IMG/VR virus record: IMGVR_UViG_3300025770_001492
Span: 62,001-126,000 of that record
DNA length: 64,000 nucleotides
Reading direction: 5' to 3' (one strand)
Shown here: positions 9,482-62,508 of the stretch, piece by piece
Numbering within the stretch: the stretch's first letter is position 1
Layout of the letters: every line of letters begins with the position of its first letter
Program-made: the position numbers and the translations under genes
The notes under the pieces: model-generated
Told to the model about the DNA's origin: nothing
Seen by the model: only the letters and a program-made list of their open reading frames with translations
The model's database searches: none

Positions 9482-12400
9482 CTATACAGGAAACAACGAT
9501 ATTATGTCAACCTTTCTTACGCCAGAAGATAAAACTGATTCTGAAATTTGAATTTTCAATTCAGGATCAGTTTGCCACCCGCCAACAAAGAATCCCATTG
9601 AATCATGAAAAACTTCATAATCTACAACATAAGGCGAGTTTCCTGAGACATAAGAGACTTTTGAGTCTACATCGATATTGAACTCAAAGTTTAACTTGTC
9701 GCTTACGCAAACAGTATCCCGACTAAATGTATACAACAACCTAGCATCATAATCTTCTAAGCTAACTAGATTCTTTCTCTTTATGTAAAGGGAAAGCTTC
9801 CAATTCGGGGTTTGTGTCTGTTCCGAGATAAAATTATTGTTATTACAAGTGAACTCAAACAAAAACGTCCACCTCTCTTGAGAAGAACCATCAATACCAA
9901 TGCCAGTATATTGAATGTTTTCTCTCCAAGAAACATTCAAAGAGTCGTACCTTAACGTTAAAATGTCTGGAAAAGTTATATCATTTAATGTTGAAAAACT
10001 CCTCAACAAAGTGCTTTTGTTTAAATTTTGTTTTAAACTTAAGGTCAAGGGAAGAGGATCGCATCCACAGATAGTGGTAACCGTACCGTCATCTATAGTT
10101 AAAGTATCGCCTGTAATAATGCCTGGGAATGAAGCCGCTTCTTCAGTCAACTCCGCTTCTGCTCCGATGTAAGCTGTTAAAGTTCCCAAGAAGGAGCTAA
10201 ACACTCCAGCACTGCCGCCCATACTCATACTTCCAGAGCCAGACGCACTCCAGCTAGAACTAATAACAACAGGATTACCGCTTAAACCAATTCCTCCTAA
10301 TGATTCATAACTATAATGAATTATAAAACCTGAAGATCCAGAAACCGATATGTCTCCTGTTGATTCAATAGATCTAGAAATCAAGACTTCTCCAGAAGCA
10401 GAAAGGCCACCACTGCCTGCATAAGTAACATAAGAAGAAACATCCTCAGAGTCACCTGAAATTATCAATCCTCCATCTCCTTCGTAAGAATGATTATTCT
10501 TTAAATTATTAGCCTCTCCAGATAATGTAATTCCTCCAGATGAAATATAGTTGAAACCACCAGTACTGACAGATGCTTCTCCTGAAGTAGAAATTAAAGG
10601 AAAGAGAGGAATAAATTCAAGAGCAACTTCCTGAACTGAACTTCCTTCTAAAAAGATTCCAGAACTAGCAACGAACGTATAGCTACTAGACTCATTAGCA
10701 ATCGTCCCCGATACCCCTATAGATCCAGATCCAATATAGGCATAAAACTCAGAAGAAATATCTGAATTTCCTAGCAGCACCACCTCGCCATTAGACTCGT
10801 AAATCCAAGAACTACTTTCTGTCGTTATGCTTCCAGAAGCAACTATTCCTCCTGTAGACTCATAAGAGTAAAATCCAACTTCTCCTGATGTTGCACTAGC
10901 GAATAGACCTCCGACAGATTCGTAGACAAAGAATGTATCTTGAATCGTTACATTCATACCCATGAAGACTTGAGGCTGCTCCGAAAGGCAAAACTCTGCA
11001 CACTCTGGTATTTGACAAAACTCTTCTTCAACCAACTCTAAGCAATCATGATTTATTCCTTGAGCTTCCTGACTCCGAATCACATTTAAATTGGCAGGTC
11101 TACTAAATCTTTTTATACTCTTAACAGGCCATATCATCGGATAAGAGAAATATGCTTGTTTTAATTTTTCGCAGACATCTGACACCGATCTTGCAACAAC
11201 AGTCTGGAAAAACCTTTTTCCTTGGGTGCATGTTTCACCGTCATCAAAAGTAGCGTTTTCGCAATCTGGCTGCTGGCAGTCACCTTCAACTCTATAAAAC
11301 ATTAATGGCGACTCGCCCACATCCCACTGGAAGTTCTGGAAGGAATAAACCTCTCCCTGTACAGCCCATTGGAAATCTTGAGTAAATATATAATCTACAA
11401 CAACTACTGTTTTGTTAAAGATATTTTCTGTAATTAAAAGACCGCCAGAAGATTCGAATGCTATCAGCCACTTGCTTTCTGCAAAACCTGACAGGCTGAG
11501 ACCGCCAGAAGATTCATATTTATAATCTTTTACCCCTTCATTTGAATCACCCGATATTATCACGCCGCCAGATGAAACATAGTTGAACCCACTTATCAAA
11601 TAGTCGGATTCCCCTGAAACAGATAATCCTCCAGATGATGTGAATCTTTTGGTTAACAATACATTTGCAGAACCTGAAAGTTGGACTCCACCTCTTGCTA
11701 CCCAGTCTCCCCTAACAGAAGAACTTCCCGATACAACTAATCCACCAGAAGATTCAAAAGCAAATGAATTCGATGTTACACCAGACTGGCCAGATAATAA
11801 TATTCCACCGGATGGAACAACAGGGATAATCAGTGAAGTTTCAGACTCTCCGCTTAATATAATTCCACCAGAAGCTTCGGCAGAATACTCCCTTTGATCT
11901 ATAGAATCCCCGGCTAGTACCAGACCGCCAGAACCTTCTACTGAAATGTTTGTCATTCCAGCATCAGACTCACCAGCAACTGACACTCCAACACCAGTCG
12001 TGCGAAGCAAATCAGAACTGCCACTTAATGTAATTCCTCCGTCAGATTCGGCAGGAATAGACATAGAATAAAAATAAAACCCAGAGTTATAATGAGCAGA
12101 GACATCTTCTGTGCTTAAAACTGAATTCCAATAAGCGGTGTAGCCTAATTGCCCATCAAAGAATTTGGGAGATGCCGTCCCAGATTGAGTCACATATCCA
12201 AGATGCCCACCAACCAAATTTCTGTCTCCAGAAGGGTTGCATCCGGTACATGCTCCTCTGTCGTCGTACAATCTCGCCAACTTAGTTGTGGTTTGTGTTC
12301 CTATCAACTCTCCGTTCAAATAAGCTTTTAATGTCGCTCCAGTTGATGGCCAATTACTTTCAAAAGTAATCACCACCTGGTGGGGTTTGTCCCAATTTGC

Positions 12401-15400
12401 AACAAAGTCAAGAGCAGAACCGCCTGCATTCGGGGTAAACCCCCCTCCAAGACGGATGCTCCAAGGTTCTGCAACTCCTACATCTGTTGTAGAATCGTAA
12501 ATCCATATGTCTAAGTAATTACCCCTAGAGGGGTTAACTACGCTGTTACTACCATAATCAATCCAAATACCATGACCAAAATCATTTATTGCTGGAGATG
12601 GCCCTCCTACTCCCTGATGCCAAAGAGGCATGTTTTGATTAAAAGATGAGTATATTGATTTCGTTGGCAAGAACCAAATTTCTACACTCTTAGATGTATA
12701 GGGACCACCAGTGTTTATAAAATCGCTGTCTGGTATTAGAACTCTATCGGCGTCGATTGCACTAAGGTCAATTGTTGTATCTGTAGTGGCTTGAATTATA
12801 GGAGGAGACCCAAGATCGATAGGTCCTACATACTCTCCATCTAAAGAATCACCCTCTGTTCCAAGATTGTCCGATACTGTTCCAGAAGATTCATTGAATT
12901 TCCAGAATCCAACTGCGTCGGATGATGTTATCAAGTCGGACAATGTCAAAGGAAGAACTCTAATCCCCCCGCTGGCTATAAATTTCCTTTCAAGAGATGC
13001 CTCTCCAGAAAGTGTAATACCACCAGAAGATGTGTGTGATATTATTGGCAAAGCATCTGCAACCCCTGTGAGGGATATTCCACCAGAAGAAGTGTAGTCA
13101 AACGAAGAAGCAACTAAGTCGGCTTGGCCAGACATCGAAACTCCGCCCTCTCCATCCATTTGCCTTGTGACGTAAACATTAGATTCTCCACTTAAGGAGA
13201 CCCCACCTCTTGCTAACCAATCCCCCCTAATAGAAGAGTTTCCTGATATAGCCAAGCCGCCAGAAGGCTCAAAACTAAATGATGAAGAAGTTACGCCAGA
13301 CTGACCAGATAATGATACTCCACCTCCTGCAATGTAGAGACTGACATAAGCATCAGAGCCTCCGCCTATCGTGATCCCTCCAGAACCTGTAACAGACTGT
13401 TGCCATTTCGATTCCGTCGTAGATCTTAGTATCAGACCGCCAGAACCTTCTACTGAGGTATTTGTCATTCCAGCATCAGACTCGCCAGAAGTTATTACGC
13501 CACCACCTGATGTGAAACTTATTTCATATGGTTCATAACTTCCGCTAAGTGTAACTCCACCAGAACCTTCAACAAAATATTGTTCTTGCTCTTCGGAATC
13601 CCCGCTTAGTATCAGACCGCCAGAACCTTCAAAAATACGTGCTCCTGATATCGTGACAGATTCACCAGAAACTGTTGCCCTAACGCCAGTTGTGCGAAGC
13701 AAATCAGAACTGCCGCTTAGTGCAATGCCGCCAGAACCTTCAACAAAATATTGTTCTTGCTCTTCGGAATCCCCGCTTAGTATCAGACCACCAGAACCTT
13801 CTACTAAGTAGTAGCTTGACATCAAGTAGTCAGATTCACCAGAAACTGCTACCCCAACACCCGTTGTACGAAGCAAATCAGAACTGCCGCTTAGTGTAAT
13901 GCCTCCGTCAGATTCAGCAGGAATGGATAGGCCATATGGAAAATAAGTATACGACTGTCTAGTTTCTATGTCAGACTGAGATAAGACTATATTGTAAGAT
14001 GCGATGTATCCAATTCGGCCTTCAAAGAAGTTGCCAATACCAGAAACATCACCATCATGATATTTAGTTTGGCCTCTTACTCCGAAGTATCCAGTTGCCA
14101 CTGGAATGATAGACATGCTACCCACAGAAAGATCACTGCCAACTTCTGTACCATTTAAATAAAGTCTAAAAGATGTGCTGTCCAAGAAAGTTAAAACAAC
14201 ATGATATATCTCGCCCAACTCCAGATCATCAACATTAATGAAAGCCTGCCAAGAGTTAGATGTGTCCCACGCTCCAGCATACAAACTAGATCCATCTAAA
14301 TAGATATTGAACCCGTTTGCAGCATTACCTGCGGTGTATATGGCCCGTCTGCCACTTAAGGAATTTGGACTAACCCACAATTCAATGGACTTATCTCCAC
14401 TCGCTCTTAACTCGGTTCCGTCAGACCTCTCTACTCTGTCATCACCAGGAATTTTCTGAAAATCTCGCACAAGTGGAGACTCTGTAGGAATGAGTCCCTC
14501 TGACCAACGTATATTACCTTCGTGAATCCCATTCTCGGCACTACCAGAACTGCTTCGGTTTTTAGCCACGGTTCCAGAACCCTCGTCCAACGGCCAGAAT
14601 CCTGCGGATTCGGAAGCCATTAGTGTAAACAGACGAGGACTCCTTAGTGTCAAGCCGCCTGAAGCAATAATTTTCGGCGTAATGTCTACTTCGCCTGAAA
14701 TCGACACTCCTCCAGATCCTGTGACAAAAAGCTGCACTTCCTCTACGGCATCCCCACTTAGCACCAATCCACCAGAAGATACAAAACTTATCTTGTATGG
14801 TTCGTAGCTGCCACCTAGTGTGATTCCGCCTTCTGAAACGTGTCTGTAACCCGTTATTAAATGATCAGACTCTCCAGACAAGATAAATGGATTAGAAGAT
14901 CTGTAAGTTATTGAGGGCCAGAATCGGTTTGCTAGTGTCACAGCGGGTTCTCCGCCATCGGCCACCAGTCCTCCTGAAGGATTCCCATCCAGAATCATGT
15001 TGAAGTTATAAACTCCAGCAGAATAATGTCTTCTAACTTCCGTTGCCGATAAAGTTGCATTTTGCAGAGAAAGATGGTTTATTTTTCCATTAAAATAATT
15101 TCCAACCAAAAACCCATCATGGTATTCTACACCGGCTGTGGTGCCGCCAATGAAAGGGGCTTGAGTGTGTGACCGAAGCTGACCGCAACTTTCAGATCCA
15201 ATTTCTTCTCCATTCAAGTACCCTTTGAGTTGACCCCCTGTATTTGACAAGGTTGGATTATCGAATGTAAGCACAACATGATAGATCCCTCCTGCATCAA
15301 CAGGAGCGGATACAAATTTTTCCCATTGGCTCGCACCGGCACCACCATTGTTATATCCATAAACATAAAGAATTCCGTCAAGGATGTATATATTTAACCC

Positions 15401-16774
15401 TCTTGTCCCTCCACCCTGACAATATATTGTGCGTCTTCCATAAGTAGAATATGCTTGAAACCAAATTTCAACGCTTTTGTTCGGATAGCCACCGCTCGAC
15501 GTGCCCCCAGCAGCGAGTGGATTGTTGCCTATTAAATCATTGGCCGGAATTGACACATAGTCGTTTACTCCATCAAACTCAGCAGCGAAACCCCCTACTT
15601 CCTGAAGTATGCCACCCTCTCCAGTAGTCACAAAGTTTTTATATGTTCCATCAACTGCTGTGCCAATCGTTCCATAATTTTCAGCAACAGAAGCACCTGA
15701 CGATTCATCCAACTTCCAATATGCTATTGGTTGAGAACCAGATACAATGTCAACATAAGAGTCTTTTGATATAATCAAAGAACCTTGAGACATTGCTCTA
15801 AGTTCAGTGATTGAAGCAGCACTTGTTCCAGAAACTGACACCCCGCCCGATGCTGTGACGTACCTTTCGTCTGATTTGTCCAGAGCGGTTGATTCACCTG
15901 CGACAGAGATGCCACCAGAAGATACGCCGCCCCAAGCACTACTTTTAACTGACGACTGGCCCGATATTACAACGCCACCACTTGAGGTGTCAGATAAACT
16001 AAAGGATATTTCAGCCTGTCCTCCTATCGAAATCCCACCATTTACAGAATGACTTAATCTAAGATCGACATCTGCCGTGCCGCTAATCGTTTTTGGCCTC
16101 TCTTCTGCTAGTGTATCCGCCCAATAACTTAAATCAGATTGTAGAAGCAATCCTGATCCTGCAATTGTCACGACACCAGCATAATAGGCGTCGTTTTCTT
16201 TAACAATTCCGTCATTAAAACCATTATATTTTCCATCGCTGGAATCCGCCCACGGATGGTTTGATGCAGGTTGCCCAGCAGTCTCCATCGGAGACCCATC
16301 ATCTGATTGGTCTTCTGCAACTAAGACATTATCTACCCATACCCGAACCCTCGCTACTGGTTCGACTTGAAATTCCCACATTAAATCAAAATCTACATTC
16401 TGTGGCAGGGATGCAGTGGATATTTCAACTCTAGCGTAATTGTTTACATCGACCTCAGGGGTTCCTGGCCCGCCCGGGGGATATTTTCCATCTCCCATTC
16501 TGACAATCAATGTGCTTGATGAATTAAAGCCGCAATATCCACCTTTGGTATTCGACCCCATTTCAAAAATGCAACCGTATGGATTTTTTCCCGTTGGTAT
16601 TTTTATAGTTGCTTTGAATACAGAGTTTTGATTTGACCCCATGCTGGGAACAGCACCACCGGAATTGTAGTTATAGTCTCTGGTTATATTGGTGCCACTA
16701 GTGATCGATTCATCAGCAGATACAATAGGAGTCGGATCAAAATCAATGTCTGTTGCAAAACTGAAATCCGCCAT
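9482..16774 (-). CDS. giant (~2,430 aa) LamG/concanavalin-A-domain repeat protein, probably virion-associated
   Basis: Three YWKLDE/FWPLDE/FWKFNE LamG modules plus an N-terminal beta-sandwich, separated by dozens of SGG-x-x-SG repeats; Cys-rich C-terminal region; AGGAAGGAAG before ATG at 16774 (MADFSF). Confidence 0.75.
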   Translation of the reverse strand: MADFSFATDIDFDPTPIVSADESITSGTNITRDYNYNSGGAVPSMGSNQNSVFKATIKIPTGKNPYGCIFEMGSNTKGGYCGFNSSSTLIVRMGDGKYPPGGPGTPEVDVNNYARVEISTASLPQNVDFDLMWEFQVEPVARVRVWVDNVLVAEDQSDDGSPMETAGQPASNHPWADSSDGKYNGFNDGIVKENDAYYAGVVTIAGSGLLLQSDLSYWADTLAEERPKTISGTADVDLRLSHSVNGGISIGGQAEISFSLSDTSSGGVVISGQSSVKSSAWGGVSSGGISVAGESTALDKSDERYVTASGGVSVSGTSAASITELRAMSQGSLIISKDSYVDIVSGSQPIAYWKLDESSGASVAENYGTIGTAVDGTYKNFVTTGEGGILQEVGGFAAEFDGVNDYVSIPANDLIGNNPLAAGGTSSGGYPNKSVEIWFQAYSTYGRRTIYCQGGGTRGLNIYILDGILYVYGYNNGGAGASQWEKFVSAPVDAGGIYHVVLTFDNPTLSNTGGQLKGYLNGEEIGSESCGQLRSHTQAPFIGGTTAGVEYHDGFLVGNYFNGKINHLSLQNATLSATEVRRHYSAGVYNFNMILDGNPSGGLVADGGEPAVTLANRFWPSITYRSSNPFILSGESDHLITGYRHVSEGGITLGGSYEPYKISFVSSGGLVLSGDAVEEVQLFVTGSGGVSISGEVDITPKIIASGGLTLRSPRLFTLMASESAGFWPLDEGSGTVAKNRSSSGSAENGIHEGNIRWSEGLIPTESPLVRDFQKIPGDDRVERSDGTELRASGDKSIELWVSPNSLSGRRAIYTAGNAANGFNIYLDGSSLYAGAWDTSNSWQAFINVDDLELGEIYHVVLTFLDSTSFRLYLNGTEVGSDLSVGSMSIIPVATGYFGVRGQTKYHDGDVSGIGNFFEGRIGYIASYNIVLSQSDIETRQSYTYFPYGLSIPAESDGGITLSGSSDLLRTTGVGVAVSGESDYLMSSYYLVEGSGGLILSGDSEEQEQYFVEGSGGIALSGSSDLLRTTGVRATVSGESVTISGARIFEGSGGLILSGDSEEQEQYFVEGSGGVTLSGSYEPYEISFTSGGGVITSGESDAGMTNTSVEGSGGLILRSTTESKWQQSVTGSGGITIGGGSDAYVSLYIAGGGVSLSGQSGVTSSSFSFEPSGGLAISGNSSIRGDWLARGGVSLSGESNVYVTRQMDGEGGVSMSGQADLVASSFDYTSSGGISLTGVADALPIISHTSSGGITLSGEASLERKFIASGGIRVLPLTLSDLITSSDAVGFWKFNESSGTVSDNLGTEGDSLDGEYVGPIDLGSPPIIQATTDTTIDLSAIDADRVLIPDSDFINTGGPYTSKSVEIWFLPTKSIYSSFNQNMPLWHQGVGGPSPAINDFGHGIWIDYGSNSVVNPSRGNYLDIWIYDSTTDVGVAEPWSIRLGGGFTPNAGGSALDFVANWDKPHQVVITFESNWPSTGATLKAYLNGELIGTQTTTKLARLYDDRGACTGCNPSGDRNLVGGHLGYVTQSGTASPKFFDGQLGYTAYWNSVLSTEDVSAHYNSGFYFYSMSIPAESDGGITLSGSSDLLRTTGVGVSVAGESDAGMTNISVEGSGGLVLAGDSIDQREYSAEASGGIILSGESETSLIIPVVPSGGILLSGQSGVTSNSFAFESSGGLVVSGSSSVRGDWVARGGVQLSGSANVLLTKRFTSSGGLSVSGESDYLISGFNYVSSGGVIISGDSNEGVKDYKYESSGGLSLSGFAESKWLIAFESSGGLLITENIFNKTVVVVDYIFTQDFQWAVQGEVYSFQNFQWDVGESPLMFYRVEGDCQQPDCENATFDDGETCTQGKRFFQTVVARSVSDVCEKLKQAYFSYPMIWPVKSIKRFSRPANLNVIRSQEAQGINHDCLELVEEEFCQIPECAEFCLSEQPQVFMGMNVTIQDTFFVYESVGGLFASATSGEVGFYSYESTGGIVASGSITTESSSWIYESNGEVVLLGNSDISSEFYAYIGSGSIGVSGTIANESSSYTFVASSGIFLEGSSVQEVALEFIPLFPLISTSGEASVSTGGFNYISSGGITLSGEANNLKNNHSYEGDGGLIISGDSEDVSSYVTYAGSGGLSASGEVLISRSIESTGDISVSGSSGFIIHYSYESLGGIGLSGNPVVISSSWSASGSGSMSMGGSAGVFSSFLGTLTAYIGAEAELTEEAASFPGIITGDTLTIDDGTVTTICGCDPLPLTLSLKQNLNKSTLLRSFSTLNDITFPDILTLRYDSLNVSWRENIQYTGIGIDGSSQERWTFLFEFTCNNNNFISEQTQTPNWKLSLYIKRKNLVSLEDYDARLLYTFSRDTVCVSDKLNFEFNIDVDSKVSYVSGNSPYVVDYEVFHDSMGFFVGGWQTDPELKIQISESVLSSGVRKVDIISLFPV
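13560..13789. repeat. 59-bp identical direct repeat in the giant gene
   Basis: ccagaaccttcaacaaaatattgttcttgctcttcggaatccccgcttagtatcagacc at 13560-13618 and 13731-13789; further near-identical repeats at ~12003/13695/13869 and 11921/13433. Confidence 0.9.
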
Positions 16775-16776
16775 GG

Positions 16777-16911
16777 TCAGTCTTCCTTCCTGTGTGAAGC
16801 GTCCTTGAACAAGTCGCCAATTGAAGACCAAGATTGCGCAGGCGATACCACATCAGACTTGCCACTTGTCTGATAACTCCCGCTATCTGCTGTGTAAACG
16901 AAATCAGCCAT
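16777..16911 (-). CDS. 44-aa ORF resembling the start and linker repeats of the downstream giant protein
   Basis: MADFVYTADSGSYQTSGKSDVVSPAQSWSSIGDLFKDASHRKED; not in the ORF track; same MADF start as the giant gene. Confidence 0.55.
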   Translation of the reverse strand: MADFVYTADSGSYQTSGKSDVVSPAQSWSSIGDLFKDASHRKED

Positions 16912-18122: not shown

Positions 18123-18551
18123 ATGAATTTTAGACAATTTTTAATAGAATCAGATTACAACGTAAAAAAGACCCTTGGAAAAGTACCAAAGAGTCATCGA
18201 TCCCTTATTGAAAAATATAAAGTAGAATTTGAAAAGGGAAACACTCTGGATGGGGACCACATTGGTGAAATAGATGAAAAAAAGAAGAAAATAAAACTTG
18301 CTGGCCCATGGAACTACGGAAGAGAATTCACCTTCCTGCACGAATTGGGCCATGCAGTATGGAATTACTTACTTGATGAAGAAAGTAAAAAAGAATGGAC
18401 GAAAGTTGTCAAAAAAACAAATAAACCAAGACAGCATCAAGGAATGGAAGAATTATTCTGCATGGCATATGCCAATTTTTACGCAAAAAACAAAATCGTA
18501 ATTCACGATCATCCAGAATGGGAAGAATTTATCAAAAAGTTGCCCAAATAA
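18123..18551 (+). CDS. HExxH zinc metallopeptidase-like protein with N-terminal capsid-targeting-like motif
   Basis: FLHELGHAVW plus downstream EELF third-ligand helix; starts MNFRQFLIESD; TATATA at 18107-18112. Confidence 0.7.
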   Translation: MNFRQFLIESDYNVKKTLGKVPKSHRSLIEKYKVEFEKGNTLDGDHIGEIDEKKKKIKLAGPWNYGREFTFLHELGHAVWNYLLDEESKKEWTKVVKKTNKPRQHQGMEELFCMAYANFYAKNKIVIHDHPEWEEFIKKLPK

Positions 18552-18579
18552 GTATACAACTCTCATCCAGAAAAGTACA

Positions 18580-18669
18580 ATGTACCGGATCTCATTCAAA
18601 AGCTTCATACAAGAAAAGCGATTCTTGAAATGGAAACAACTTCTTCAGAAAAAGACCAGCTACGTCTGA
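18580..18669 (+). CDS. 29-aa ORF with capsid-targeting-like motif, -1 out of frame with the RNA ligase
   Basis: MYRISFKSFIQEKRFLKWKQLLQKKTSYV; a -1 shift at GAA-AAG (18613-18618) gives MYRISFKSFIQEKAILEMETT, continuous with the ligase. Confidence 0.5.
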   Translation: MYRISFKSFIQEKRFLKWKQLLQKKTSYV

Positions 18670-19868
18670 TTATAACGAAATTGGCACTGGGCGACTTCAA
18701 CTGGCTCAAGGAGAAAGACATTCTAGTCGGTGATAAAGGTTCATCATGGATCTTAAATTATGGAATGAAAGATAAAAACGAGTTCAATAGACTTGTTCGT
18801 GGAATGGTAGTAGAAAAACCACATGCAAATAATTTCTTTCATGGCGACGATCCGCTAAAAGAAATCAAAAGCTTTCCTTTCATCAGATTTTTCAATCAAG
18901 GAGAAAAAGAATCTGACGAAATCGACATGAACGATTCGGAAATGCTTGAAAAGCTAGATGGAACCATGGTTGGAGTGTTTTTCTCAACCTATGATCCATC
19001 TAGCCCACAATGGCACACGAGAAGAATGTTAAGTTCATACGAATCCGATATGAAAAATACAGTCAAAGGATTTCATGGAGGGAATTACAACCTTATGTAT
19101 GAGATTGGCAAGTATGTAAAGAAACTTAATTTCAACCGAGAAGACACAAGCCACACATACGTTTTTGAATTCATTCATGACGCATCAACCGTGTTGACAA
19201 AATACAAAGAGAGCCAATGGGGATTATATCTTTTAGCTGGAAGAAACGTTGAAACGCACAAAGAAGAAACAGAAAGCGAATTGGACAAAATCTCAAAAAG
19301 AATTGGTGCCAACCGCCCTCAGAGATGGGATGCCACAAGCGAAGAGGAAATTAAAAACATGATGCAAAAAGCTGCATCTGAGATCGAAGACTTTGAGGGC
19401 ATGGTTTTTCGTGATAAAAAAACAGGCAAAAGAGTGAAATTAAAAGATCCCAAGTATGTAGAAAAACATCACATGCTGGGAGACACATCTCTCAAAAGAC
19501 TGATCCCAAAAACAATAGAGGGAGAAGAAGATGAAGTAACTGCATACTTTCCTCACGTAAAAGAATTGGTAGACGATATAAAGGAAAGACATGCAAACAT
19601 CAAAAACAAAACTGTGGAAACTGTAAATCAGTTTCAGAAATACAAAAATCTTCCAAGAAAAGAACTATGGGAGAAGGTTTCAAATATAGACAATGCTTTC
19701 ATCAGAAGCATGGTAATGAAGCACGTTGAATGCGAAGATTTGGAATACGAGATAGAAAAAGAACTCAAAAGAATTGCTGTAGCAACTGTTGAAAAAGACA
19801 CTTATTTAGGAAAGCAGACATTCAGTTATGCTTCTCGAAAGTATTTAGACTTACTAGGACTCAAATAG
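18630..19868 (+). CDS. T4 Rnl1-like ATP-dependent RNA ligase
   Basis: Motif I EKLDGT, motif IIIa FEFI, motif IV EGMVF, motif V VKLK. Confidence 0.85.
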   Translation: METTSSEKDQLRLIITKLALGDFNWLKEKDILVGDKGSSWILNYGMKDKNEFNRLVRGMVVEKPHANNFFHGDDPLKEIKSFPFIRFFNQGEKESDEIDMNDSEMLEKLDGTMVGVFFSTYDPSSPQWHTRRMLSSYESDMKNTVKGFHGGNYNLMYEIGKYVKKLNFNREDTSHTYVFEFIHDASTVLTKYKESQWGLYLLAGRNVETHKEETESELDKISKRIGANRPQRWDATSEEEIKNMMQKAASEIEDFEGMVFRDKKTGKRVKLKDPKYVEKHHMLGDTSLKRLIPKTIEGEEDEVTAYFPHVKELVDDIKERHANIKNKTVETVNQFQKYKNLPRKELWEKVSNIDNAFIRSMVMKHVECEDLEYEIEKELKRIAVATVEKDTYLGKQTFSYASRKYLDLLGLK

Positions 19869-20626
19869 TGAACGAAATCATAATCAAGAATAAGCAGCAA
19901 ATAGATGGAATACGAATAAGCTGCAAACTTGCTGCTGAGACACTAGATTACATTGAGGAATTTGTAGTAGAAGGAATCACTACAGAAGAAATCAATAATA
20001 TTGCAGCTAAATTCATAAAAGATAATGGAGCTACCTCTGCTCCACTGAACTACAAAGGATTTCCAAAAGAAACATGTATTTCCATCAACGAAGTAATATG
20101 CCACGGCATTCCAGATCAAACCGTCCTCAAGAACGGAGACATTCTGAATATCGACATAACCACAATCCTAGACGGATTCTATGGGGACACGAGCAGAATG
20201 TTTGCAGTCGGAGAAATAAACGAAACTGCGAAGGAACTGGTTCAGACGACCAAAGAATGCCTCATGATGAGCATAGAGACAGTGAAGCCTCAAAGTATGC
20301 TGTCGGGTATCGCCAAAGTAATTACCCAACATGCTGAATCTAACGGATTTAGCGTTGTCAACGCATTTTGTGGTCATGGGGTAGGACTTGAATTTCACGA
20401 GCCTCCATTCGTGCAGCACGACTATAAATCTGTAAAAGACGGATTTCTAATCAGTCTGGAAGAAGGCATGATTTTCACAATTGAACCAATGCTGTGCGAA
20501 GGGGAACGCCAAGCAATGCTTTTAGAAGACAATTGGACGGCGATTACCACAGACAAAAAACTGTCTGCTCAATTTGAGCATACAGTTTTAGTGACTAAAG
20601 GTGGATACGAAATATTGACTAAGTGA
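19868..20626 (+). CDS. map: type I methionine aminopeptidase
   Basis: DIT, GDTSR, GHGVG..FHE, TIEP and QFEHT metal-ligand motifs. Confidence 0.96.
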   Translation: MNEIIIKNKQQIDGIRISCKLAAETLDYIEEFVVEGITTEEINNIAAKFIKDNGATSAPLNYKGFPKETCISINEVICHGIPDQTVLKNGDILNIDITTILDGFYGDTSRMFAVGEINETAKELVQTTKECLMMSIETVKPQSMLSGIAKVITQHAESNGFSVVNAFCGHGVGLEFHEPPFVQHDYKSVKDGFLISLEEGMIFTIEPMLCEGERQAMLLEDNWTAITTDKKLSAQFEHTVLVTKGGYEILTK

Positions 20627-34689: not shown

Positions 34690-34884
34690 CTAACCTTTTT
34701 TCTTTTTCTTTTTCTTTTTCTTCTTCTTTTTAGTTAAACTCTCCAACTCAAAAGGCGAAGCAGTTGACCTGCCGTGGACAGAGCCTACAACGGCCAGCGG
34801 CATCAAGCCAAGAGCGGCGGCATGTCTGGCCCTTGTGGATGCACTAGATTCTTTGGTAATTAGCCAATCTTTGAAAGTAATCAT
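34690..34884 (-). CDS. small basic protein with 12-Lys tail and capsid-targeting-like N-terminus
   Basis: MITFKDWLITKE...TKKKKKKKKKKKKG; TACATA-N5-ATG. Confidence 0.65.
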   Translation of the reverse strand: MITFKDWLITKESSASTRARHAAALGLMPLAVVGSVHGRSTASPFELESLTKKKKKKKKKKKKG

Positions 34885-45029: not shown

Positions 45030-47762
45030 TTATATTCCCACTATTGTAAAGCCTTCATCGTTTATATCTTTCAAAAGCTTTTCCTCTGCCTTGGAAGGCT
45101 CATGCTTTATTTCAACTTGTTCCGGTTTAGCCATGACGACGAGTCTGCCATCTGCTGCTTTTTCAGGTAGCTCCGAACGATTTCGTTTGGTCGGACTCTG
45201 AAAAACGTGACTGCTAAATCCGGGATCAGGTCGATTGATCCTCATTCTAAGAAAGTTACCTTGGCGGAATTCTCCGTCCCAATGCTCTATTTCTTCCTTA
45301 AATCTAACAAAATCATCTTCCCACATCGTCACCAGTCTTGTGTTAAAATTTTCATCTTGAACAGTAAAAACATAATAAGGATTTCCCTTTTTAGAAAGCC
45401 TCTCCTGTAATGATGACTCCTTTTTAGGAAGCCCTTTTTTATCCAAGCTTACTATCTGACATTCAATTGGTGCCCAAAGCAAGGTTGATTCCTCATCAAA
45501 ACGGTCAAAAGTCATTCCGCCTTTATAGTCAGGGCTGAACTCTATAGGATGCTGCCATGCGAATCCATAATACATCGATTCTGCAATGCCTAGCAACTCG
45601 TTGTAAACATTTTCAAATCCCGTGTCGATTTCTCCAGAAGGCATAAAATCAGCAAGAGTGATTGGCAGATCAGAATCTTTCTTCTTCTTCAAAGATTCGA
45701 CGTTTCTCTTGTACTTCTTTCCAATCTTTAAAATGTCTTCCAAATCATCTTTTAAGTGTTGGAAATTAAAATTCTCAAATTCAAATTCAGAAATGAAGAA
45801 ATCTTTCTTAGGCAAATCTAATAAACCGCTTTTCAGAATCTCTTTTAAAAAGTTTTCAGAGGAACCATCGCCCCCATTCTTGTAAAGAACGTAGTCCATC
45901 TCTTCTACAATTTTTAATTTAGATTTATCCGCACGCTTATCTCTGTCCTGACGCTTTTTTGTTTCATGTTTAAAGTACTCCCAAAATTCATGGAGCACCT
46001 TTCTGTCTTCCTCTTCTCCGAAGCAATTTAAGGCAATCAAAGGCTTTAGAACTTTTGAATCTGTGCCAAATCTTTGCAAGAAGTCATCAAATCCACTGTA
46101 TGGCTGTCCTTCCTCGATCTTATGAGAGACATCTTCCCCTATTCCCTTAATGTCAGAGAAGCCCATATAGACCAAATCATCAACAATTTCCCAGTTCCAA
46201 CCTGATTTGTTGATGTCTACCCTTTTTAGCTCTACACCATCTTTCTCTGCCTCAAGTTTGTAATCTTTAATTTTACCTGACTGGGTTTCGCATTGCAAAG
46301 TTCCACAATAAAACTCAATTGGAAAATGTGCCTTCAAGTAAAGAAGCCTAGACGAAATATAAGAATATGCGTAAGCGTGGCTTGCGTTAAATCCGTACTC
46401 TGAAAAAGCTTCCACTTGATCCCACAGTTCTTCAACTTCTTTCTTTTCCCAGCCGAGATTTGATTGCCCACGACCAACGAACTGCTCTTTATATCGAGCA
46501 AACTCCTTAACCTTTTTCTTACTCATTGCTTTTCTGACTTTTTCGCAATGAATAAGCGGAATGTCTCCCACGACATTCAAAATTTTCATAACCTGTTCTT
46601 GGTAAACCATAACTCCATATGTTCTGCCAAGAATTGGCCTGAGAATCGGATGCAAATCTCCATCCATGTCTGGAACTGGATTACTAACAGGCTCTTGTCC
46701 TCTTTTTCGCCTGATGTACGTTTTATCCATGTCCATATTAAGAGGGCCGGGTCTGTACAGAGCAGAATAAGCAGGTAAATCATCAAACCCTGTTACACCG
46801 CCTTTTTTAACCATCTCACGCATTCCATTAGAATCAAACTGGAAAATGCACTTTAGCTTTCCTTCATCCGCTAAAGCAATTGCTTTAGGGTCATTCAGAT
46901 AGGCAGTATCAGACCAATCGTCATCCGTGCCATCCAAAGCAGATATTGTCTTTATGTGAGGATGATTCCTTTTGACTAACTCGCTGATGGTTACAATTCT
47001 TTTCAAATCCGTAACAACCAAGAGGTCAAATTTAATCAAACCCAAAGGGCCTAAGTCGGTTCCAGACAGCCCTTCCACAAATGCAGAAACATAAGCGTCG
47101 TCTTTGCCCTTAACCAGTGGAACCAGTTTATTGATTCTTTGATCAGAAATGATTAGCCCACCAGCATGCATTCCCATTCCACGATTGCGATTTAAAAGCC
47201 TACGGGCAGCGTCTGCAACATCTGGATTGTCTTCGCAATATTTGCCCAATTTCTCAAATTGCTCTAAAGCTTTATCGAAAGTAAGAGTCTTGCCATCATT
47301 ATCTTTCAAGCCAAGCTGAGTGGTTAGTCCTATAATTTCATTTCGATCCTTATCATGGACCTTGGCCATATCAATTAAAGAACTTTTTATTCCGTAAGTT
47401 GTGTAGTTGCCAATTGCGCAAACATTTTCTTTTCCAAACTCTTTCGGTGCCCACTCAACCTTTAGATAATCACGAACTTGAGGTAAGTAATCTATATCAA
47501 TATCTGGAAACTCGCCCTGTACAGAAACTGGTGGCAAATTTATGTCGAAATCATCGACCAAGTCTAAAAGATAAGCAATTAAAAGATTGTTTTCATTGTT
47601 TTCAAATTTAGCTTTTTTAGAATGAAGATCTACAAAATACTCATGTTCCGCCTGAGCATCAAGCTCTTTAAGCTCCTCTCTTAATCGCTCTTTATATTCA
47701 GAAGAATCTAAGCCCTTTTTGGACATTCCTTCCACGCAAAGTTTTAGTAGTTGATCTCTCAT
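45030..47762 (-). CDS. dnaE: DNA polymerase III alpha, C-terminal polypeptide (catalytic palm, fingers, HhH, OB)
   Basis: FPDIDIDY, HAGG, KFDLL, FQFDS, ALYRPGP, YQEQVM, YGFNASHA and KAHFP; no PHP, no GPGRGS, no intein. Confidence 0.95.
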   Translation of the reverse strand: MRDQLLKLCVEGMSKKGLDSSEYKERLREELKELDAQAEHEYFVDLHSKKAKFENNENNLLIAYLLDLVDDFDINLPPVSVQGEFPDIDIDYLPQVRDYLKVEWAPKEFGKENVCAIGNYTTYGIKSSLIDMAKVHDKDRNEIIGLTTQLGLKDNDGKTLTFDKALEQFEKLGKYCEDNPDVADAARRLLNRNRGMGMHAGGLIISDQRINKLVPLVKGKDDAYVSAFVEGLSGTDLGPLGLIKFDLLVVTDLKRIVTISELVKRNHPHIKTISALDGTDDDWSDTAYLNDPKAIALADEGKLKCIFQFDSNGMREMVKKGGVTGFDDLPAYSALYRPGPLNMDMDKTYIRRKRGQEPVSNPVPDMDGDLHPILRPILGRTYGVMVYQEQVMKILNVVGDIPLIHCEKVRKAMSKKKVKEFARYKEQFVGRGQSNLGWEKKEVEELWDQVEAFSEYGFNASHAYAYSYISSRLLYLKAHFPIEFYCGTLQCETQSGKIKDYKLEAEKDGVELKRVDINKSGWNWEIVDDLVYMGFSDIKGIGEDVSHKIEEGQPYSGFDDFLQRFGTDSKVLKPLIALNCFGEEEDRKVLHEFWEYFKHETKKRQDRDKRADKSKLKIVEEMDYVLYKNGGDGSSENFLKEILKSGLLDLPKKDFFISEFEFENFNFQHLKDDLEDILKIGKKYKRNVESLKKKKDSDLPITLADFMPSGEIDTGFENVYNELLGIAESMYYGFAWQHPIEFSPDYKGGMTFDRFDEESTLLWAPIECQIVSLDKKGLPKKESSLQERLSKKGNPYYVFTVQDENFNTRLVTMWEDDFVRFKEEIEHWDGEFRQGNFLRMRINRPDPGFSSHVFQSPTKRNRSELPEKAADGRLVVMAKPEQVEIKHEPSKAEEKLLKDINDEGFTIVGI

Positions 47763-49577: not shown

Positions 49578-49581
49578 TCAG

Positions 49582-49937
49582 TGGACCGGACGGGAGTCGA
49601 ACCCGTGTGTTGCGCTACCTATTCAAAAGCGTCTACCTGTATAGTTTGATGTTTGAGTTTCGCATCATTAAACCACAACAAACAAAGGTTTAAATCAACT
49701 ATCAAACAACGAGTCTTAGTTCAAAAGTAGTTTGATTTGCTTTGAACGCATCCAGTATTGCGGCAAGTTGTCAAACGTCACTGGCAGACCTTTGAAACTT
49801 GGGCTACTTATAATTAAGCAGCCATAGCGAAATTAGTTTTGTCAACTAAATTTTTAATCGGATTTTTAAGGAGCCTTCCGATCAACTCCTACAGGCAACT
49901 CAAGAACTCAACAGCCAATCGATACCATTTCCAGCCC
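49582..49937 (-). ncRNA. ssrA: tmRNA, tag (A)DKTNFAMAA
   Basis: Acceptor stem GGGCTGG/CCGGTCC-A with G3.U70; T arm ACGGG-TTCGACT-CCCGT; tag frame 49843-49814 GAC AAA ACT AAT TTC GCT ATG GCT GCT TAA after TTTAGTT; CCA not encoded. Confidence 0.95.
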
Positions 49938-49984: not shown

Positions 49985-50305
49985 CTAATTTTTATGAGCA
50001 TCTGCCCATTTTGAATCTTCTGGAATGTCGTGTGTTTTGACGTAATCTCGCCACTTTTCATATCCATAAAGATCGATATATTCGCCTCTTCTTAGAGATC
50101 TTTTTTCTTCTGCCTGCTTGAGAATCTTTTTCCTATCTTGATCAAGCTTTGGATAATCGGCACGACCAGATTGCTGCGATGCTGCTGTATTCGCCCTCTT
50201 TAGCTTCTTTTCAAAAGATTTACTAGTTTTTCTCAACTCTTCCCGTCCTTCTAAGAACTTAGAAAAATTCATAAAATATTCAGTCTGTTTGTTGTGTGAT
50301 TTCAT
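49985..50305 (-). CDS. basic hypothetical protein with capsid-targeting-like motif
   Basis: TATATA-N5-ATG at 50305; MNFSKFLEGREE motif from the internal ATG at 50272. Confidence 0.6.
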   Translation of the reverse strand: MKSHNKQTEYFMNFSKFLEGREELRKTSKSFEKKLKRANTAASQQSGRADYPKLDQDRKKILKQAEEKRSLRRGEYIDLYGYEKWRDYVKTHDIPEDSKWADAHKN

Positions 50306-51937: not shown

Positions 51938-52258
51938 ATGCAATTCAGAAAATGGCTAATAAAAGAAATGGCTCACATATCAATTGATGAACCAATCGAC
52001 ATTGGAGATCAAAAAAATGTATCTATGATTGATATGCAGTTTGAACTATATCCCGACATGACCCAGACAACTCTAGCTCACTGGATAGTCAACGGATTTG
52101 CCGCCAAAGTCCCAAATAGCAATTATTATATAGTTTTTGACGGAAAAACAGGAAAAGCAAAGGTGTCCGATTCGACAGAGAACAAAATGCAAGTTCCTGG
52201 CGAATGGCACAAAATGGCTTATATGTCGAGCGATATGCCAGCTTGGAAATCTGCGTGA
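51938..52258 (+). CDS. hypothetical protein with capsid-targeting-like N-terminus
   Basis: MQFRKWLIKEMAH; TATATA-N4-ATG. Confidence 0.65.
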   Translation: MQFRKWLIKEMAHISIDEPIDIGDQKNVSMIDMQFELYPDMTQTTLAHWIVNGFAAKVPNSNYYIVFDGKTGKAKVSDSTENKMQVPGEWHKMAYMSSDMPAWKSA

Positions 52259-53640: not shown

Positions 53641-53863
53641 CACAAACTCCACAGTTTCTTGTGGTGTAGACTATATCATCACCCCGAAGGGTGTCGGACG
53701 CTCTGGCCTGTAATTAAGAGGACTGAACCTCTCAGGTAGTCGTTGCACGTTCCAAAAGTGTACTTCTGGCTTCGCTCAGGATTGCCCTCGACTTTACGTT
53801 AGGGTTTCCCTGAATTCATCCGATTTGCATGCAAGATTTCTCTCACATGGCCCCAGTTAGTTA
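53641..53863 (-). ncRNA. group I self-splicing intron, 223 nt, no endonuclease ORF
   Basis: P1 GCCU|UA..UGGGGC with U.G at the 5' splice site; P2 with GAAA loop; P3 UCGGAUG/CGUCCGA; P4 UUCAGG/CCUGAG; P7 GACUA/UAGUC; P8 with UUCG loop; P9; terminal omega-G. Removal restores HTDFSLLDGY. Confidence 0.93.
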
Positions 53864-61912: not shown

Positions 61913-62119
61913 TTATTCCTTTGATTCATCTTCTATCAATTCTCCAGATTCAGCATCAACGATAGCAAAATCAGAAACATCCATTTTCAATGTTTCTACA
62001 TACTCTGCACATGCAGCGAGCATTTCTTTCGCTTCTTCAACATCAGAAGTAAACCACAATCCAACTTGAGGATGCTTTAAGGTTCTGCCTGTCTTTTTAT
62101 TCAATAAAGTATACATCAA
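61913..62119 (-). CDS. hypothetical protein
   Basis: 68 aa. Confidence 0.6.
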   Translation of the reverse strand: MMYTLLNKKTGRTLKHPQVGLWFTSDVEEAKEMLAACAEYVETLKMDVSDFAIVDAESGELIEDESKE

Positions 62120-62508
62120 CCTATATTAGTATCAGGCGATGGAACTTGAACCGTTGAGTTAGCATTATTTTGAGCTTGTCCAAATTGTTGAGGCTGACCT
62201 ATGCCGCCGCCACGAACCGAACCAGATTTTGGCGTCGAGGGTGGGGACATATTAGAAGCAGGGGGAACAGGATTCGGCTGAGTGCCGGGACTCATGTTTG
62301 AAGCTGGTCTTTTGTTGTTTGTTTGCAATTTGTCAGACACATTAAATGCCGATCTGGGCTTTTTAGAACTATTTAAATTATCTTGAGGATTGATGCCTGC
62401 CATTTGTGGATTAGCAGGTGCTACAGGGCTTTCTCCTGCCCTTCCTGCTGCGTTCATTCCTGTGGCACTTGCTCCCGTGCCTTGCTCAAGCCATTTTCTG
62501 AATTCCAT
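62116..62508 (-). CDS. Pro/Gln/Gly-rich disordered protein with capsid-targeting-like N-terminus
   Basis: MEFRKWLEQG; PASNMSP twice; TACATA-N5-ATG. Confidence 0.65.
   Translation of the reverse strand: MEFRKWLEQGTGASATGMNAAGRAGESPVAPANPQMAGINPQDNLNSSKKPRSAFNVSDKLQTNNKRPASNMSPGTQPNPVPPASNMSPPSTPKSGSVRGGGIGQPQQFGQAQNNANSTVQVPSPDTNIG

What the first reader, a model, noticed from the sequence alone, without database searches (positions are those of the whole stretch)
18580..19868. RNA ligase with a capsid-targeting-like leader one base out of frame: candidate virion-delivered tRNA repair with a frameshift switch
Seen: an unannotated ATG at 18580 opens MYRISFKSFIQEK, which carries the same FxxF/W-L/I..E motif as several other genes here. 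A -1 shift at GAA-AAG (18613-18618) continues it as KAILE-METTSSEK into the Rnl1-like ligase. The annotated ligase ATG (18630) has no Shine-Dalgarno. Established: A-AAG tetramers read by tRNA-Lys support -1 shifts in bacteria (IS3 family), T4 Rnl1 repairs anticodon-nuclease-cut tRNA, and T4 internal proteins are packaged via MKTYQEFIAE. Inference: either a programmed shift yields a minority packaged ligase isoform, or one A was lost in the A-run (mutation or assembly error) and the ligase simply carries the leader. Both readings imply an RNA ligase ejected with the DNA to counter tRNA-cleaving defences early in infection.
Basis: partly seen in the sequence, partly recalled or inferred. Interest (0 to 1): 0.75.

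Follow-up and report, generated by a model that had tools for sequence, protein, structure and literature searches.

The report
RNA ligase that lost its capsid-targeting-like leader
In this uncultured huge marine phage, a real one-base deletion has cut an RNA-repair ligase off from a short N-terminal tag, which about 5% of the phage's genes carry and which resembles phage T4's capsid-targeting signal, so here the ligase is probably no longer packaged, although its relatives probably still package theirs.

Summary
ATG 18580 opens a 29-codon ORF beginning MYRISFKSFIQE, one base out of frame with an Rnl1-type RNA ligase (18630-19868).

The leader is homologous to an in-frame leader in most ligase homologues. 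The closest in-frame allele class (88% aa) reads through GAAAAAG where the window has GAAAAG (18613-18618). The missing A is not an assembly artefact: three independent sequencing runs (2012, 2018, 2025) and several other assemblies have the same sequence.

The frameshifted alleles form one clade. No other homologue is frameshifted, no stimulatory RNA structure or tandem slippery heptamer is present, and sister lineages lost the leader in other ways. The best reading is therefore an ordinary lineage-specific indel, not a programmed switch. Weak incidental slippage at A_AAG is not excluded.

The larger result concerns the leader itself. The motif F-[K/R/S]-x-[F/W]-[L/I]-x(0-3)-E sits at the extreme N-terminus of 17 of 319 genes here and 9-12 genes in each of three relatives (28-50% GC). 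Tagged proteins include an ArdC-like protein, a nucleotidyltransferase and a metalloprotease-like protein. Relatives encode T4-type capsid, scaffold and prohead-protease genes.

Capsid targeting is a well-motivated inference, not shown.

The parts
18123..18551 (+). Upstream gene of 142 aa: a HExxH (HELGH) metalloprotease-like protein that itself starts with the leader (MNFRQFLIE...). It is conserved upstream of the ligase in relatives and is tagged in all four genomes examined.
   Evidence: (phrog_1233, and phrog_17197 peptidase, weak)
18580..18669 (+). Leader-remnant ORF of 29 aa. Its first 12 codons (18580-18615) encode the complete tag motif M-Y-R-I-S-F-K-S-F-I-Q-E. The rest is out-of-frame read-through over the ligase start.
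18613..18618 (+). GAAAAG, the site of the one-base deletion. It has A4 where the in-frame sister alleles have A5. It is also an A_AAG tetranucleotide on which -1 slippage would restore the ancestral fusion.
   Evidence: Atkins et al. 2016 (PMC5009743)
18618..18629 (+). Former tail of the leader (A-I-L-E in the ligase frame). It is now untranslated sequence just upstream of the ligase ATG, and corresponds to V-F-L-E in the in-frame alleles.
18630..19868 (+). Rnl1-type ATP-dependent RNA ligase of 412 aa. The ORF is intact and the nucleotidyltransferase motifs are intact: K108 in EKLDG, E180, E256/G257 and K270/K272.
19868..20626 (+). M24 methionine aminopeptidase. Its GTG start overlaps the ligase stop by one base (TAGTG). 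The same arrangement is seen in relatives.
51938..52258 (+). Another leader-tagged gene in the window (MQFRKWLIKE...), 106 aa.
62116..62508 (-). Another leader-tagged gene (MEFRKWLEQ...), 130 aa.
34690..34884 (-). Another leader-tagged small gene (MITFKDWLITKE...), 64 aa. A similar small tagged ORF exists in relative G001.
49985..50272 (-). Possible leader-tagged gene (MNFSKFLEGRE...). The start is ambiguous, because the ORF is open to an earlier ATG at 50407.

Best explanation
This is an Rnl1-type RNA ligase gene whose ancestral N-terminal leader has been uncoupled from the enzyme by loss of one A in a GAAAAAG run, now GAAAAG at 18613-18618. The deletion is a real, fixed genotype of one lineage of an uncultured huge marine phage. 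It arose once and is not a conserved recoding signal. The phage now most likely makes a leaderless ligase from the conserved Met at 18630, the same start that naturally leaderless homologues use, plus a 29-aa peptide carrying the orphaned tag. The leader belongs to a clade-wide family of N-terminal tags, M-x(0-7)-F-[K/R/S]-x-[F/W]-[L/I]-x(0-3)-E, carried by about 2-5% of genes. By analogy with the T4 capsid-targeting sequence MKTYQEFIAE, the tag most likely docks cargo proteins onto the scaffolding core of a T4-type prohead and is cut off after the Glu by a T4-type (S77) prohead protease, so that the cargo is ejected with the DNA. Shown: the frameshift, its reality and its single origin; leader homology; N-terminal enrichment of the tag; and the T4-type head genes in relatives. 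Inferred: packaging, cleavage and ejection; use of the 18630 start; and the tRNA-repair role.
For: Reality of A4: Logan contigs of three independent DNA runs (2012, 2018, 2025) and an ENA contig are identical over 18400-19000 with no gaps. Five further contigs of diverged, mosaic backgrounds carry the same A4. Leader homology: the sister alleles L002, L003, L082 and L083 read in frame as MRNRLSFK[N/D]FMYEKVFLE-MQTT through GAAAAAG. About 13 of 25 ligase loci carry an in-frame x-F-[K/R]-x-F-[L/I]-x-E-M-E-T-T leader. Single origin: the frameshifted alleles form one clade (support 100/97). Labile leader: L084 and L085 lost it through ATG to ATA, loss of F-K and E to G. Other lineages have none, for example L005 with a stop four codons upstream and a canonical SD. 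Starred branches of the tree force at least 4-5 changes of leader state. No recoding signals: folding 18619-18700 gives z = +0.88, there is no X_XXY_YYZ heptamer, and no other gene in four genomes shows an out-of-frame leader over a long ORF. Active enzyme: the motifs are invariant, the AF2 model has pLDDT 88.5, and the top Foldseek hit is T4 Rnl1 2c5u at E 2.6e-13. Tag family: 18, 12, 11 and 12 N-terminal occurrences in G0-G3 against 1.0-1.5 expected (p 1e-16 to 7e-8), across 28-50% GC. In 47 of 48 tagged proteins an E follows within 5 residues, against 29% of untagged proteins. T4-type head: Gp23-family capsid genes occur in G001, G002 and G003. An S77 protease, scaffold and capsid module occurs in G003 and in LR756511.1, the nearest database relative, with tagged genes beside it. 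T4 CTS facts come from PMC8442874, PMC3012670 and PMC5694885.
Against: No head genes or protease were found in the window's own 245-kb record, which is about 49% complete, nor an S77 protease in G001 or G002. There is no proteomic or experimental evidence that any tagged protein is in a virion or is cleaved. The position of the Glu relative to the hydrophobic residue does not always fit the T4 rule [L/I]-x-E. The 18630 ATG has no SD-like sequence, so its use is assumed, not shown. The leader ORF and the tail A-I-L-E are still intact, as would also be expected if slippage were being used. RNA contigs cover only 18715 onwards.
Confidence: 0.7

Rival explanations
1. Compensated indel. A minority of ribosomes starting at 18580 slip -1 on A_AAG (18615-18618) and make a full leader-ligase fusion. 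The phage would then keep a small packaged pool of ligase, either as a tuned ratio or as tolerated leakage.
For: A_AAG is the classic minimal -1 shift site in bacteria. It is used incidentally at A_CGA_AAG in B. subtilis cdd and productively at G_CGA_AAG in IS1222 (PMC5009743). The window's A_GAA_AAG has the same form. The slip restores exactly the ancestral junction E-K-[A/V]-[I/F]-L-E-M. The leader ATG, the motif and the tail are all still intact in every member of the frameshifted clade, and the single substitution in the leader is synonymous in the leader frame. The allele persists on several mosaic backgrounds from 2012 to 2025.
Against: There is no tandem heptamer, no downstream structure (z +0.88) and no upstream SD-like stimulator. 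The arrangement is unique to one shallow clade among about 25 loci and occurs in no other tagged gene. The shared block is only about 2% diverged, so an intact leader is expected even without selection. Sister lineages simply discard the leader.
Confidence: 0.13
2. Sequencing or assembly error. The true sequence has A5 and the ligase simply carries the leader.
For: Homopolymer miscounts do occur, and the nearest in-frame alleles have A5.
Against: Contigs assembled independently from runs of 2012, 2018 and 2025, an ENA assembly, and five further contigs from other samples all have A4 with no gap. All gene calls in the 90% cluster are 412 aa. A 4-5 base run is not error-prone in short-read data.
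Confidence: 0.02
3. The shared N-terminal motif is not a capsid-targeting propeptide. It would instead be another kind of signal, such as a degradation or localisation tag, a partner-binding helix, or a by-product of a translation-initiation or promoter element. The ligase would then never have been a virion protein in any lineage.
For: There is no direct evidence of packaging or cleavage. The own record shows no head genes. Tagged genes share a CATAAATAAT-like box just upstream of the ATG, so regulatory co-evolution around the start exists. The Glu position does not always obey the T4 [L/I]-x-E rule.
Against: The motif is kept at the protein level across 28-50% GC, with K/R, F/W and L/I exchanges. 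It is strictly N-terminal and nearly always followed by Glu, the residue after which all known T4-type and phiKZ-type prohead proteases cut (PMC5694885). It aligns residue for residue with the T4 CTS core Y-Q-E-F-I-A-E. Relatives have T4-type protease, scaffold and capsid genes, with tagged genes adjacent. The cargo includes an ArdC-like anti-restriction protein.
Confidence: 0.3

Closest known systems
[quoted passage not shown]
   Same: Both are N-terminal peptides of about 10 residues shared by otherwise unrelated proteins of one phage. Both have the pattern aromatic-x-x-aromatic-[I/L]-x-Glu and end in Glu. The phage clade has T4-type capsid, scaffold and S77 protease genes, and the cargo includes candidate anti-defence proteins.
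   Different: The consensus differs: F-[K/R]-x-[F/W]-[L/I] rather than Y-Q-E-F-I. There are many more cargo genes (9-17 per partial genome, against three IPs) and the cargo includes enzymes. Spacing to the Glu is variable. Packaging and cleavage are untested. In this window's ligase the tag is out of frame.
T4 RNA ligase 1 (gp63, Rnl1)
   Same: Best structural match over about 400 aligned columns. PHROG 562 matches, PF09511 matches 11 of 32 homologues, and the nucleotidyltransferase motifs are conserved.
   Different: Only about 18% identity. The window protein itself misses the Pfam threshold, and a family profile finds no PDB chain by sequence. T4 Rnl1 has no CTS and is not, to my knowledge, a virion protein. 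No Pnkp partner was found in the available record.
A_AAG single-tRNA -1 frameshift sites (IS1222 G_CGA_AAG; B. subtilis cdd A_CGA_AAG)
   Same: The same tetranucleotide, in a similar non-tandem context (A_GAA_AAG), and the -1 direction restores a longer product.
   Different: There is no stimulator, no conservation among homologues, and a recent single origin. This looks like an indel that happens to sit on a shifty tetramer.
[quoted passage not shown]
   Same: An N-terminal signal that loads anti-defence enzymes into the head for co-injection (PMC9024508).
   Different: The P1 signal is not a short motif shared by many proteins, and P1 lacks a separate scaffold. No sequence similarity was tested or claimed.
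Ejection-protein propeptides of phiKZ and SPN3US giant phages
   Same: Giant phages that package many proteins, with propeptides removed after Glu by a gp21-related protease (PMC5694885).
   Different: Those propeptides are longer and share only a cleavage motif ([S/A/G]-x-E or A-x-E), not a common N-terminal tag.

Membership tests
Rnl1-type RNA ligase (T4 gp63 family) | Covalent nucleotidyltransferase motifs: I (KxDG), III, IV and V | tested here: met
   E107-K108-x-D110-G111, F179-E180, E256-G257 and K270/K272 are invariant in a 32-sequence alignment.
Rnl1-type RNA ligase (T4 gp63 family) | Profile membership (PF09511 / PHROG 562) | tested here: inconclusive
   PHROG 562 matches at E 2.3e-30. 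PF09511 matches 11 of 32 homologues, best E 4e-18. The window protein itself has no Pfam hit at E 0.01 or below, and the family profile finds no PDB sequence.
Rnl1-type RNA ligase (T4 gp63 family) | Rnl1 fold, including the C-terminal domain | tested here: met
   AF2 model with pLDDT 88.5. The top three Foldseek hits are T4 Rnl1 structures, E 2.6e-13 over 400 columns, with TM 0.44-0.50, lowered by domain orientation.
Rnl1-type RNA ligase (T4 gp63 family) | Works with an end-healing kinase-phosphatase (Pnkp) to reseal cleaved tRNA | tested here: inconclusive
   PF13671 and PF08645 were not found in the 245-kb record, but the record is only about 49% complete. Enzyme activity cannot be tested here.
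T4-type capsid-targeting sequence | A short N-terminal peptide shared by several unrelated proteins of one phage | tested here: met
   18, 12, 11 and 12 N-terminal occurrences against 1.0-1.5 expected in four genomes.
T4-type capsid-targeting sequence | Ends in a Glu that the prohead protease cuts | tested here: inconclusive
   A Glu lies within 5 residues after the motif in 47 of 48 tagged proteins, against 29% of controls. Cleavage itself cannot be tested.
T4-type capsid-targeting sequence | The phage assembles a T4-type prohead (gp23-type shell, gp22-type scaffold core, gp21/S77 protease) | tested here: inconclusive
   Met in relatives: Gp23 in G001-G003, and S77 protease plus scaffold plus capsid in G003 and LR756511.1. 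Not found in the window's own partial record.
T4-type capsid-targeting sequence | The tag is translationally fused to its cargo | tested here: not met
   For this window's ligase the tag is in the +1 frame relative to the cargo, so a -1 shift would be needed. The feature is met in about 13 of 25 homologous loci.
T4-type capsid-targeting sequence | Sufficient to load a foreign protein into the capsid | not testable with these tools
   This needs a cultured phage of the clade.
Programmed -1 ribosomal frameshift | Slippery site | tested here: inconclusive
   Only the tetranucleotide A_AAG is present. There is no X_XXY_YYZ heptamer (PMC5009743).
Programmed -1 ribosomal frameshift | Stimulatory element (downstream structure or upstream SD-like sequence) | tested here: not met
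   Fold of 18619-18700: -9.3 kcal/mol, z +0.88. Fold of 18560-18680: z +0.40. No SD-like 4-mer lies upstream.
Programmed -1 ribosomal frameshift | The frameshift arrangement is conserved among homologues | tested here: not met
   The arrangement occurs in only one shallow clade. All other leader-bearing loci are in frame, and no other such arrangement exists in four genomes.

The most novel reading that the evidence does not exclude
The indel plus the A_AAG site acts as a dosage device. In this lineage most ligase is made untagged for cytoplasmic RNA repair, while rare -1 slippage keeps a trace of tagged ligase loaded into capsids and delivered with the DNA. This would be a natural 'indel with compensatory frameshifting' controlling whether a counter-defence enzyme is pre-packaged. 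Behind it lies the broader untested claim that a clade of huge phages uses a T4-like tag to package an RNA ligase, an ArdC-like protein, a nucleotidyltransferase and a protease.
Probability: 0.12. Interest if true: 0.75.

Novelty: new variant of a known kind. Interest (0 to 1): 0.55.

Why it matters
The frameshift itself is ordinary. What it exposed is not: a short, easily searchable N-terminal tag that marks 9-17 genes per partial genome in a clade of uncultured huge phages with T4-type heads.

If the tag is a capsid-targeting propeptide, it gives a sequence-only way to predict the set of proteins these phages inject ahead of gene expression. That set would include enzyme classes not, to my knowledge, known to be pre-packaged, such as an Rnl1 RNA ligase and an ArdC-like protein.

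The ligase family then becomes a natural experiment. The same enzyme occurs tagged, untagged, with a decayed tag, and with a frameshifted tag. This shows that packaged or cytoplasmic status is switched often in evolution. I found no description of this motif in the searchable literature.

Tried and rejected
- **Assembly error:** rejected. Independent contigs all have A4.
- **Phase-variable A-run toggling between A4 and A5:** rejected. The two allele classes differ by 30-39% in this segment, not just in run length, and each is uniform.
- **Conserved programmed frameshift:** rejected.
- **Downstream stimulatory structure:** none.
- **Alternative in-frame start upstream of 18630:** none; there is no ATG, GTG or TTG between 18552 and 18629.
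- **Internal SD before the conserved Met, as support for dual initiation:** inconsistent. Only some leader-bearing loci have an AGGAG-like run, and it is poorly spaced. Dual initiation therefore remains speculation.
- **Searches that returned nothing useful:**
  - Pfam on the window ligase.
  - The PDB sequence profile.
  - The single-protein scan of viral contigs.
  - An exact-pattern scan for A4/A5 variants in viral contigs.
  - S77, Gp23 and S78 in the own record.
  - tblastn of the 995-aa tagged protein against phages.
  - Pnkp domains.
- **Selection test on the leader after the frameshift:** no power. There is one substitution in a block about 2% diverged.
- **Read-level heterogeneity and RNA-level A insertion:** could not be examined, because only contigs were available and the RNA contigs start at 18715.
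Full report
**1. What is in the sequence**

The window is bases 62001-126000 of a 245.5-kb IMG/VR virus record (38% GC), judged about 49% complete. Its nearest record in the phage collection is LR756511.1, a 595-kb uncultured huge phage.

Reading 18300-19950 confirms every element of the observation:
- ATG 18580 opens MYRISFKSFIQEK and runs on as a 29-aa ORF to 18669.
- The 412-aa ligase ORF starts at ATG 18630, in the -1 frame relative to the leader ORF.
- GAAAAG lies at 18613-18618. A -1 slip of tRNA-Lys from AAG to AAA would continue as K-A-I-L-E-M-E-T-T.
- The ligase frame is open back to 18552 but holds no ATG, GTG or TTG before 18630.

Neither ATG has an SD-like 4-mer upstream. Only 48% of this genome's long ORFs have one, against 11% of random positions, so this carries little weight.

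**2. The enzyme**

The protein is an Rnl1-type RNA ligase:
- It matches PHROG 562, "RNA ligase and tail fiber protein attachment catalyst", the T4 gp63 family, at E 2e-30.
- PF09511 is found in 11 of 32 close homologues, although the window protein itself misses Pfam.
- An AlphaFold model built on 32 homologues (pLDDT 88.5) has the three T4 Rnl1 structures as its best PDB matches, at E 2.6e-13 over about 400 columns.
- The nucleotidyltransferase motifs are invariant in the family: K108 in EKLDG, E180, E256/G257 and K270/K272.

The enzyme therefore looks active. A tRNA-repair role is inferred from family membership only. No Pnkp-like kinase or phosphatase domain was found in the available half-genome.

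**3. The leader is real and ancestral**

Of 107 homologues, many carry an in-frame N-terminal extension just before a conserved M-E-T-T. One example ends ...S-L-K-F-K-E-F-L-L-E.

I read the DNA of about 25 homologous loci from viral and metagenome contigs:
- Thirteen have an in-frame leader x-F-[K/R]-x-F-[L/I]-x-E followed directly by the Met.
- Gene callers often clipped it. P0017/L038 is one example.
- Others have no leader at all. L005 has a stop four codons upstream and a canonical SD.

The closest in-frame allele class is 88% identical in protein (L002, L003, L082, L083). It reads MRNRLSFK[N/D]FMYEKVFLE-MQTT in one frame, passing through GAAAAAG exactly where the window has GAAAAG. Relative to its nearest in-frame relatives, the window lacks one A.

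**4. The missing A is not an artefact**

- Contigs assembled independently from DNA runs of 2012, 2018 and 2025, from different studies, match 18400-19000 with no difference and no gap.
- An ENA assembly is also identical.
- Five more contigs from other samples carry the same A4. Their ligases are 90-93% identical to the window's.
- These contigs are mosaics. The block 18600-19300 is about 2% diverged from the window, while the flanks differ by 8-20%.

The allele circulates on several genomic backgrounds.

**5. Programmed frameshift or plain indel?**

The evidence favours a plain indel:
- In a maximum-likelihood tree of 25 ligases, the three frameshifted alleles form one clade (support 100/97). 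The event happened once.
- No other locus has an out-of-frame leader.
- A scan of four genomes for leader-bearing short ORFs overlapping a long ORF in another frame found only this case.
- The RNA downstream of the site folds no better than shuffled sequence (z +0.88 and +0.40).
- There is no tandem X_XXY_YYZ heptamer and no upstream SD-like stimulator.
- The leader is evolutionarily labile. In L084 and L085, sister to the in-frame alleles, the ATG became ATA, the F-K was lost and E became G.
- Well-supported branches of the tree force at least 4-5 changes of leader state.

The simplest account is a one-base deletion that disconnects the tag, one of several routes by which this family sheds it.

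A_AAG is nevertheless a genuine minimal -1 shift site in bacteria (Atkins et al. 2016, PMC5009743). A slip there would rebuild the ancestral junction exactly. Low-level, possibly useful, slippage cannot be excluded, and I give it about 0.13. The intact state of the leader ORF carries no weight, because the shared block is too young. It shows one substitution, which is synonymous in the leader frame.

**6. What the leader is**

| Genome | GC | N-terminal occurrences (residues 1-8) | Expected | p |
|---|---|---|---|---|
| G0 (own record) | 38% | 18 of 32 total occurrences | 1.4 | 1e-16 |
| G001 | 41% | 12 | 1.2 | 5e-10 |
| G002 | 50% | 11 | 1.5 | 7e-8 |
| G003 | 28% | 12 | 1.0 | 3e-11 |

- The motif counted is F[KRS]x[FW][LI]. 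Counts are, and p values.
- In the own record, a non-overlapping gene set gives 17 tagged genes of 319.
- The signal persists across very different base composition and shows K/R, F/W and L/I exchanges, so it is selected at the protein level.
- In 47 of 48 tagged proteins a Glu follows within five residues, against 29% of untagged proteins at the same positions.
- The core F-K-E-F-L-L-E aligns position for position with Y-Q-E-F-I-A-E of the T4 capsid-targeting sequence MKTYQEFIAE. That sequence docks the internal proteins onto the prohead core and is cut off after its Glu by gp21 (PMC8442874; PMC3012670; PMC5694885).

Tagged proteins of the window's genome include:
- the HExxH protein just upstream of the ligase, which is tagged in all four genomes;
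- a 659-aa protein with PAP2, ArdC-N and metalloprotease regions;
- a Pol-beta-type nucleotidyltransferase (DUF6036);
- a 995-aa protein of unknown function.

**7. Does the clade have the T4 machinery?**

- Pfam Gp23 (T4 major capsid protein) is matched above its cut-off in G001, G002 and G003.
- G003 has a T4-ordered module: a 600-aa ORF, an S77 prohead protease (E 4.5e-27), a coiled-coil scaffold-like protein, and the capsid gene.
  - Its capsid protein has an L-N-E site ahead of the conserved core.
  - Three tagged genes lie beside the module.
- LR756511.1 has the same module (S77 at E 7e-28), followed by a 1076-aa ORF beginning MEFREWFRSAE.
- No head genes were found in the window's own partial record, and no S77 protease in G001 or G002.

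This part of the argument therefore rests on relatives. Packaging, cleavage and ejection are inferences. I put the capsid-targeting reading at roughly 0.55-0.65.

**8. Consequence for this locus**

- In relatives with an in-frame tag, the ligase is plausibly a packaged, co-injected enzyme.
- In this phage the tag is orphaned on a 29-aa peptide.
- The ligase is most likely made from the Met at 18630, the same start that leaderless homologues use.
- That Met is kept at the tag-enzyme junction in nearly all leader-bearing homologues. This could mean the two starts are used in parallel, but the evidence for an internal ribosome-binding site is inconsistent.
- The ligase stop overlaps the GTG start of the next gene, an M24 methionine aminopeptidase, by one base, as in relatives. 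This suggests, but does not prove, that the ligase ORF is still translated.
- A metatranscriptome holds contigs identical to 18715-19000. DNA carry-over cannot be ruled out.

**9. Comparison with what is known, and novelty**

- The enzyme is a new member of the Rnl1 family.
- The frameshift is an ordinary indel sitting on a known shifty tetramer.
- The tag behaves like the T4 CTS. It differs in consensus, in the number of cargo genes, in the enzymatic nature of the cargo, and in occurring in huge phages only distantly related to T4.
- Searches of the paper library for capsid-targeting sequences, packaged RNA ligases and the motif strings themselves found no prior description. The jumbo-phage survey of Iyer et al. 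discusses Rnl1 and Rnl2 in RNA repair but, in the passages retrieved, not their packaging (PMC7824862).
- I rate the whole as a new variant of a known kind.

**10. Verdict**

- Observation: confirmed.
- Interpretation: partly supported. The leader and the lost A are right. The assembly-error reading is wrong. A programmed switch is unlikely. Virion delivery is plausible for relatives but probably lost here.
- Interest is moderate, at 0.55. It comes from the clade-wide tag rather than from the frameshift.

Noticed in passing
window 49581-49937 (-): A tmRNA gene with tag peptide DKTNFAMAA*.
   Followed up: no
window 52260-53645 (-) and 45030-47762 (-): A DnaE-type DNA polymerase is split into two ORFs. 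They match contiguous parts of one PHROG profile, positions 56-439 and 441-998. The 4.5 kb between them holds the tmRNA and small ORFs, including one clear and one possible leader-tagged gene.
   Followed up: no
genome-wide; in the window, upstream of 18123, 51938 and 62508: Many leader-tagged genes have a CATAAATAAT-like or TATATA-like box ending 3-5 nt before the ATG. CATAAA occurs upstream of 5 of 17 tagged genes against 10 of 302 untagged genes (Fisher p 5e-4). The box is reminiscent of the T4 late promoter TATAAATA, as recalled from memory, and might imply very short or absent 5' UTRs.
   Followed up: partly
window 19866-19870: The ligase stop and the GTG start of an M24 methionine aminopeptidase overlap by one base (TAGTG). 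The same gene order, HExxH protein then ligase then aminopeptidase, is seen in relatives.
   Followed up: partly
window 18500-18700 compared with L002 and L084: The intergenic spacer, the leader and the first codons of the ligase form the most diverged stretch between the two allele classes. It shows 30-39% nucleotide differences, against 5-19% elsewhere. The frameshifted 5' block recombines onto different backgrounds.
   Followed up: partly
own genome 171905-173884 (+) (locus L067): A leader-tagged 659-aa protein combines PAP2, ArdC-N and metalloprotease regions. It is a candidate injected anti-restriction protein.
   Followed up: partly
own genome 209060-209692 (-) (locus L075): A leader-tagged Pol-beta-type nucleotidyltransferase, DUF6036/DUF2204. 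Whether it corresponds to the ligase-associated RlaP family described for jumbo phages (PMC7824862) was not tested.
   Followed up: no
window 9482-16831 (-): A very long ORF of 2449 aa, not examined.
   Followed up: no
LR756511.1 around 503509-544981 (locus L143): The nearest database relative has a T4-ordered head module: an 857-aa portal-like ORF, a 616-aa ORF, an S77 protease, a scaffold and a Gp23-type capsid gene. A second, weaker S77-like gene lies at 242621-242989. A 1076-aa ORF starting MEFREWFRSAE lies just downstream of the capsid gene.
   Followed up: partly
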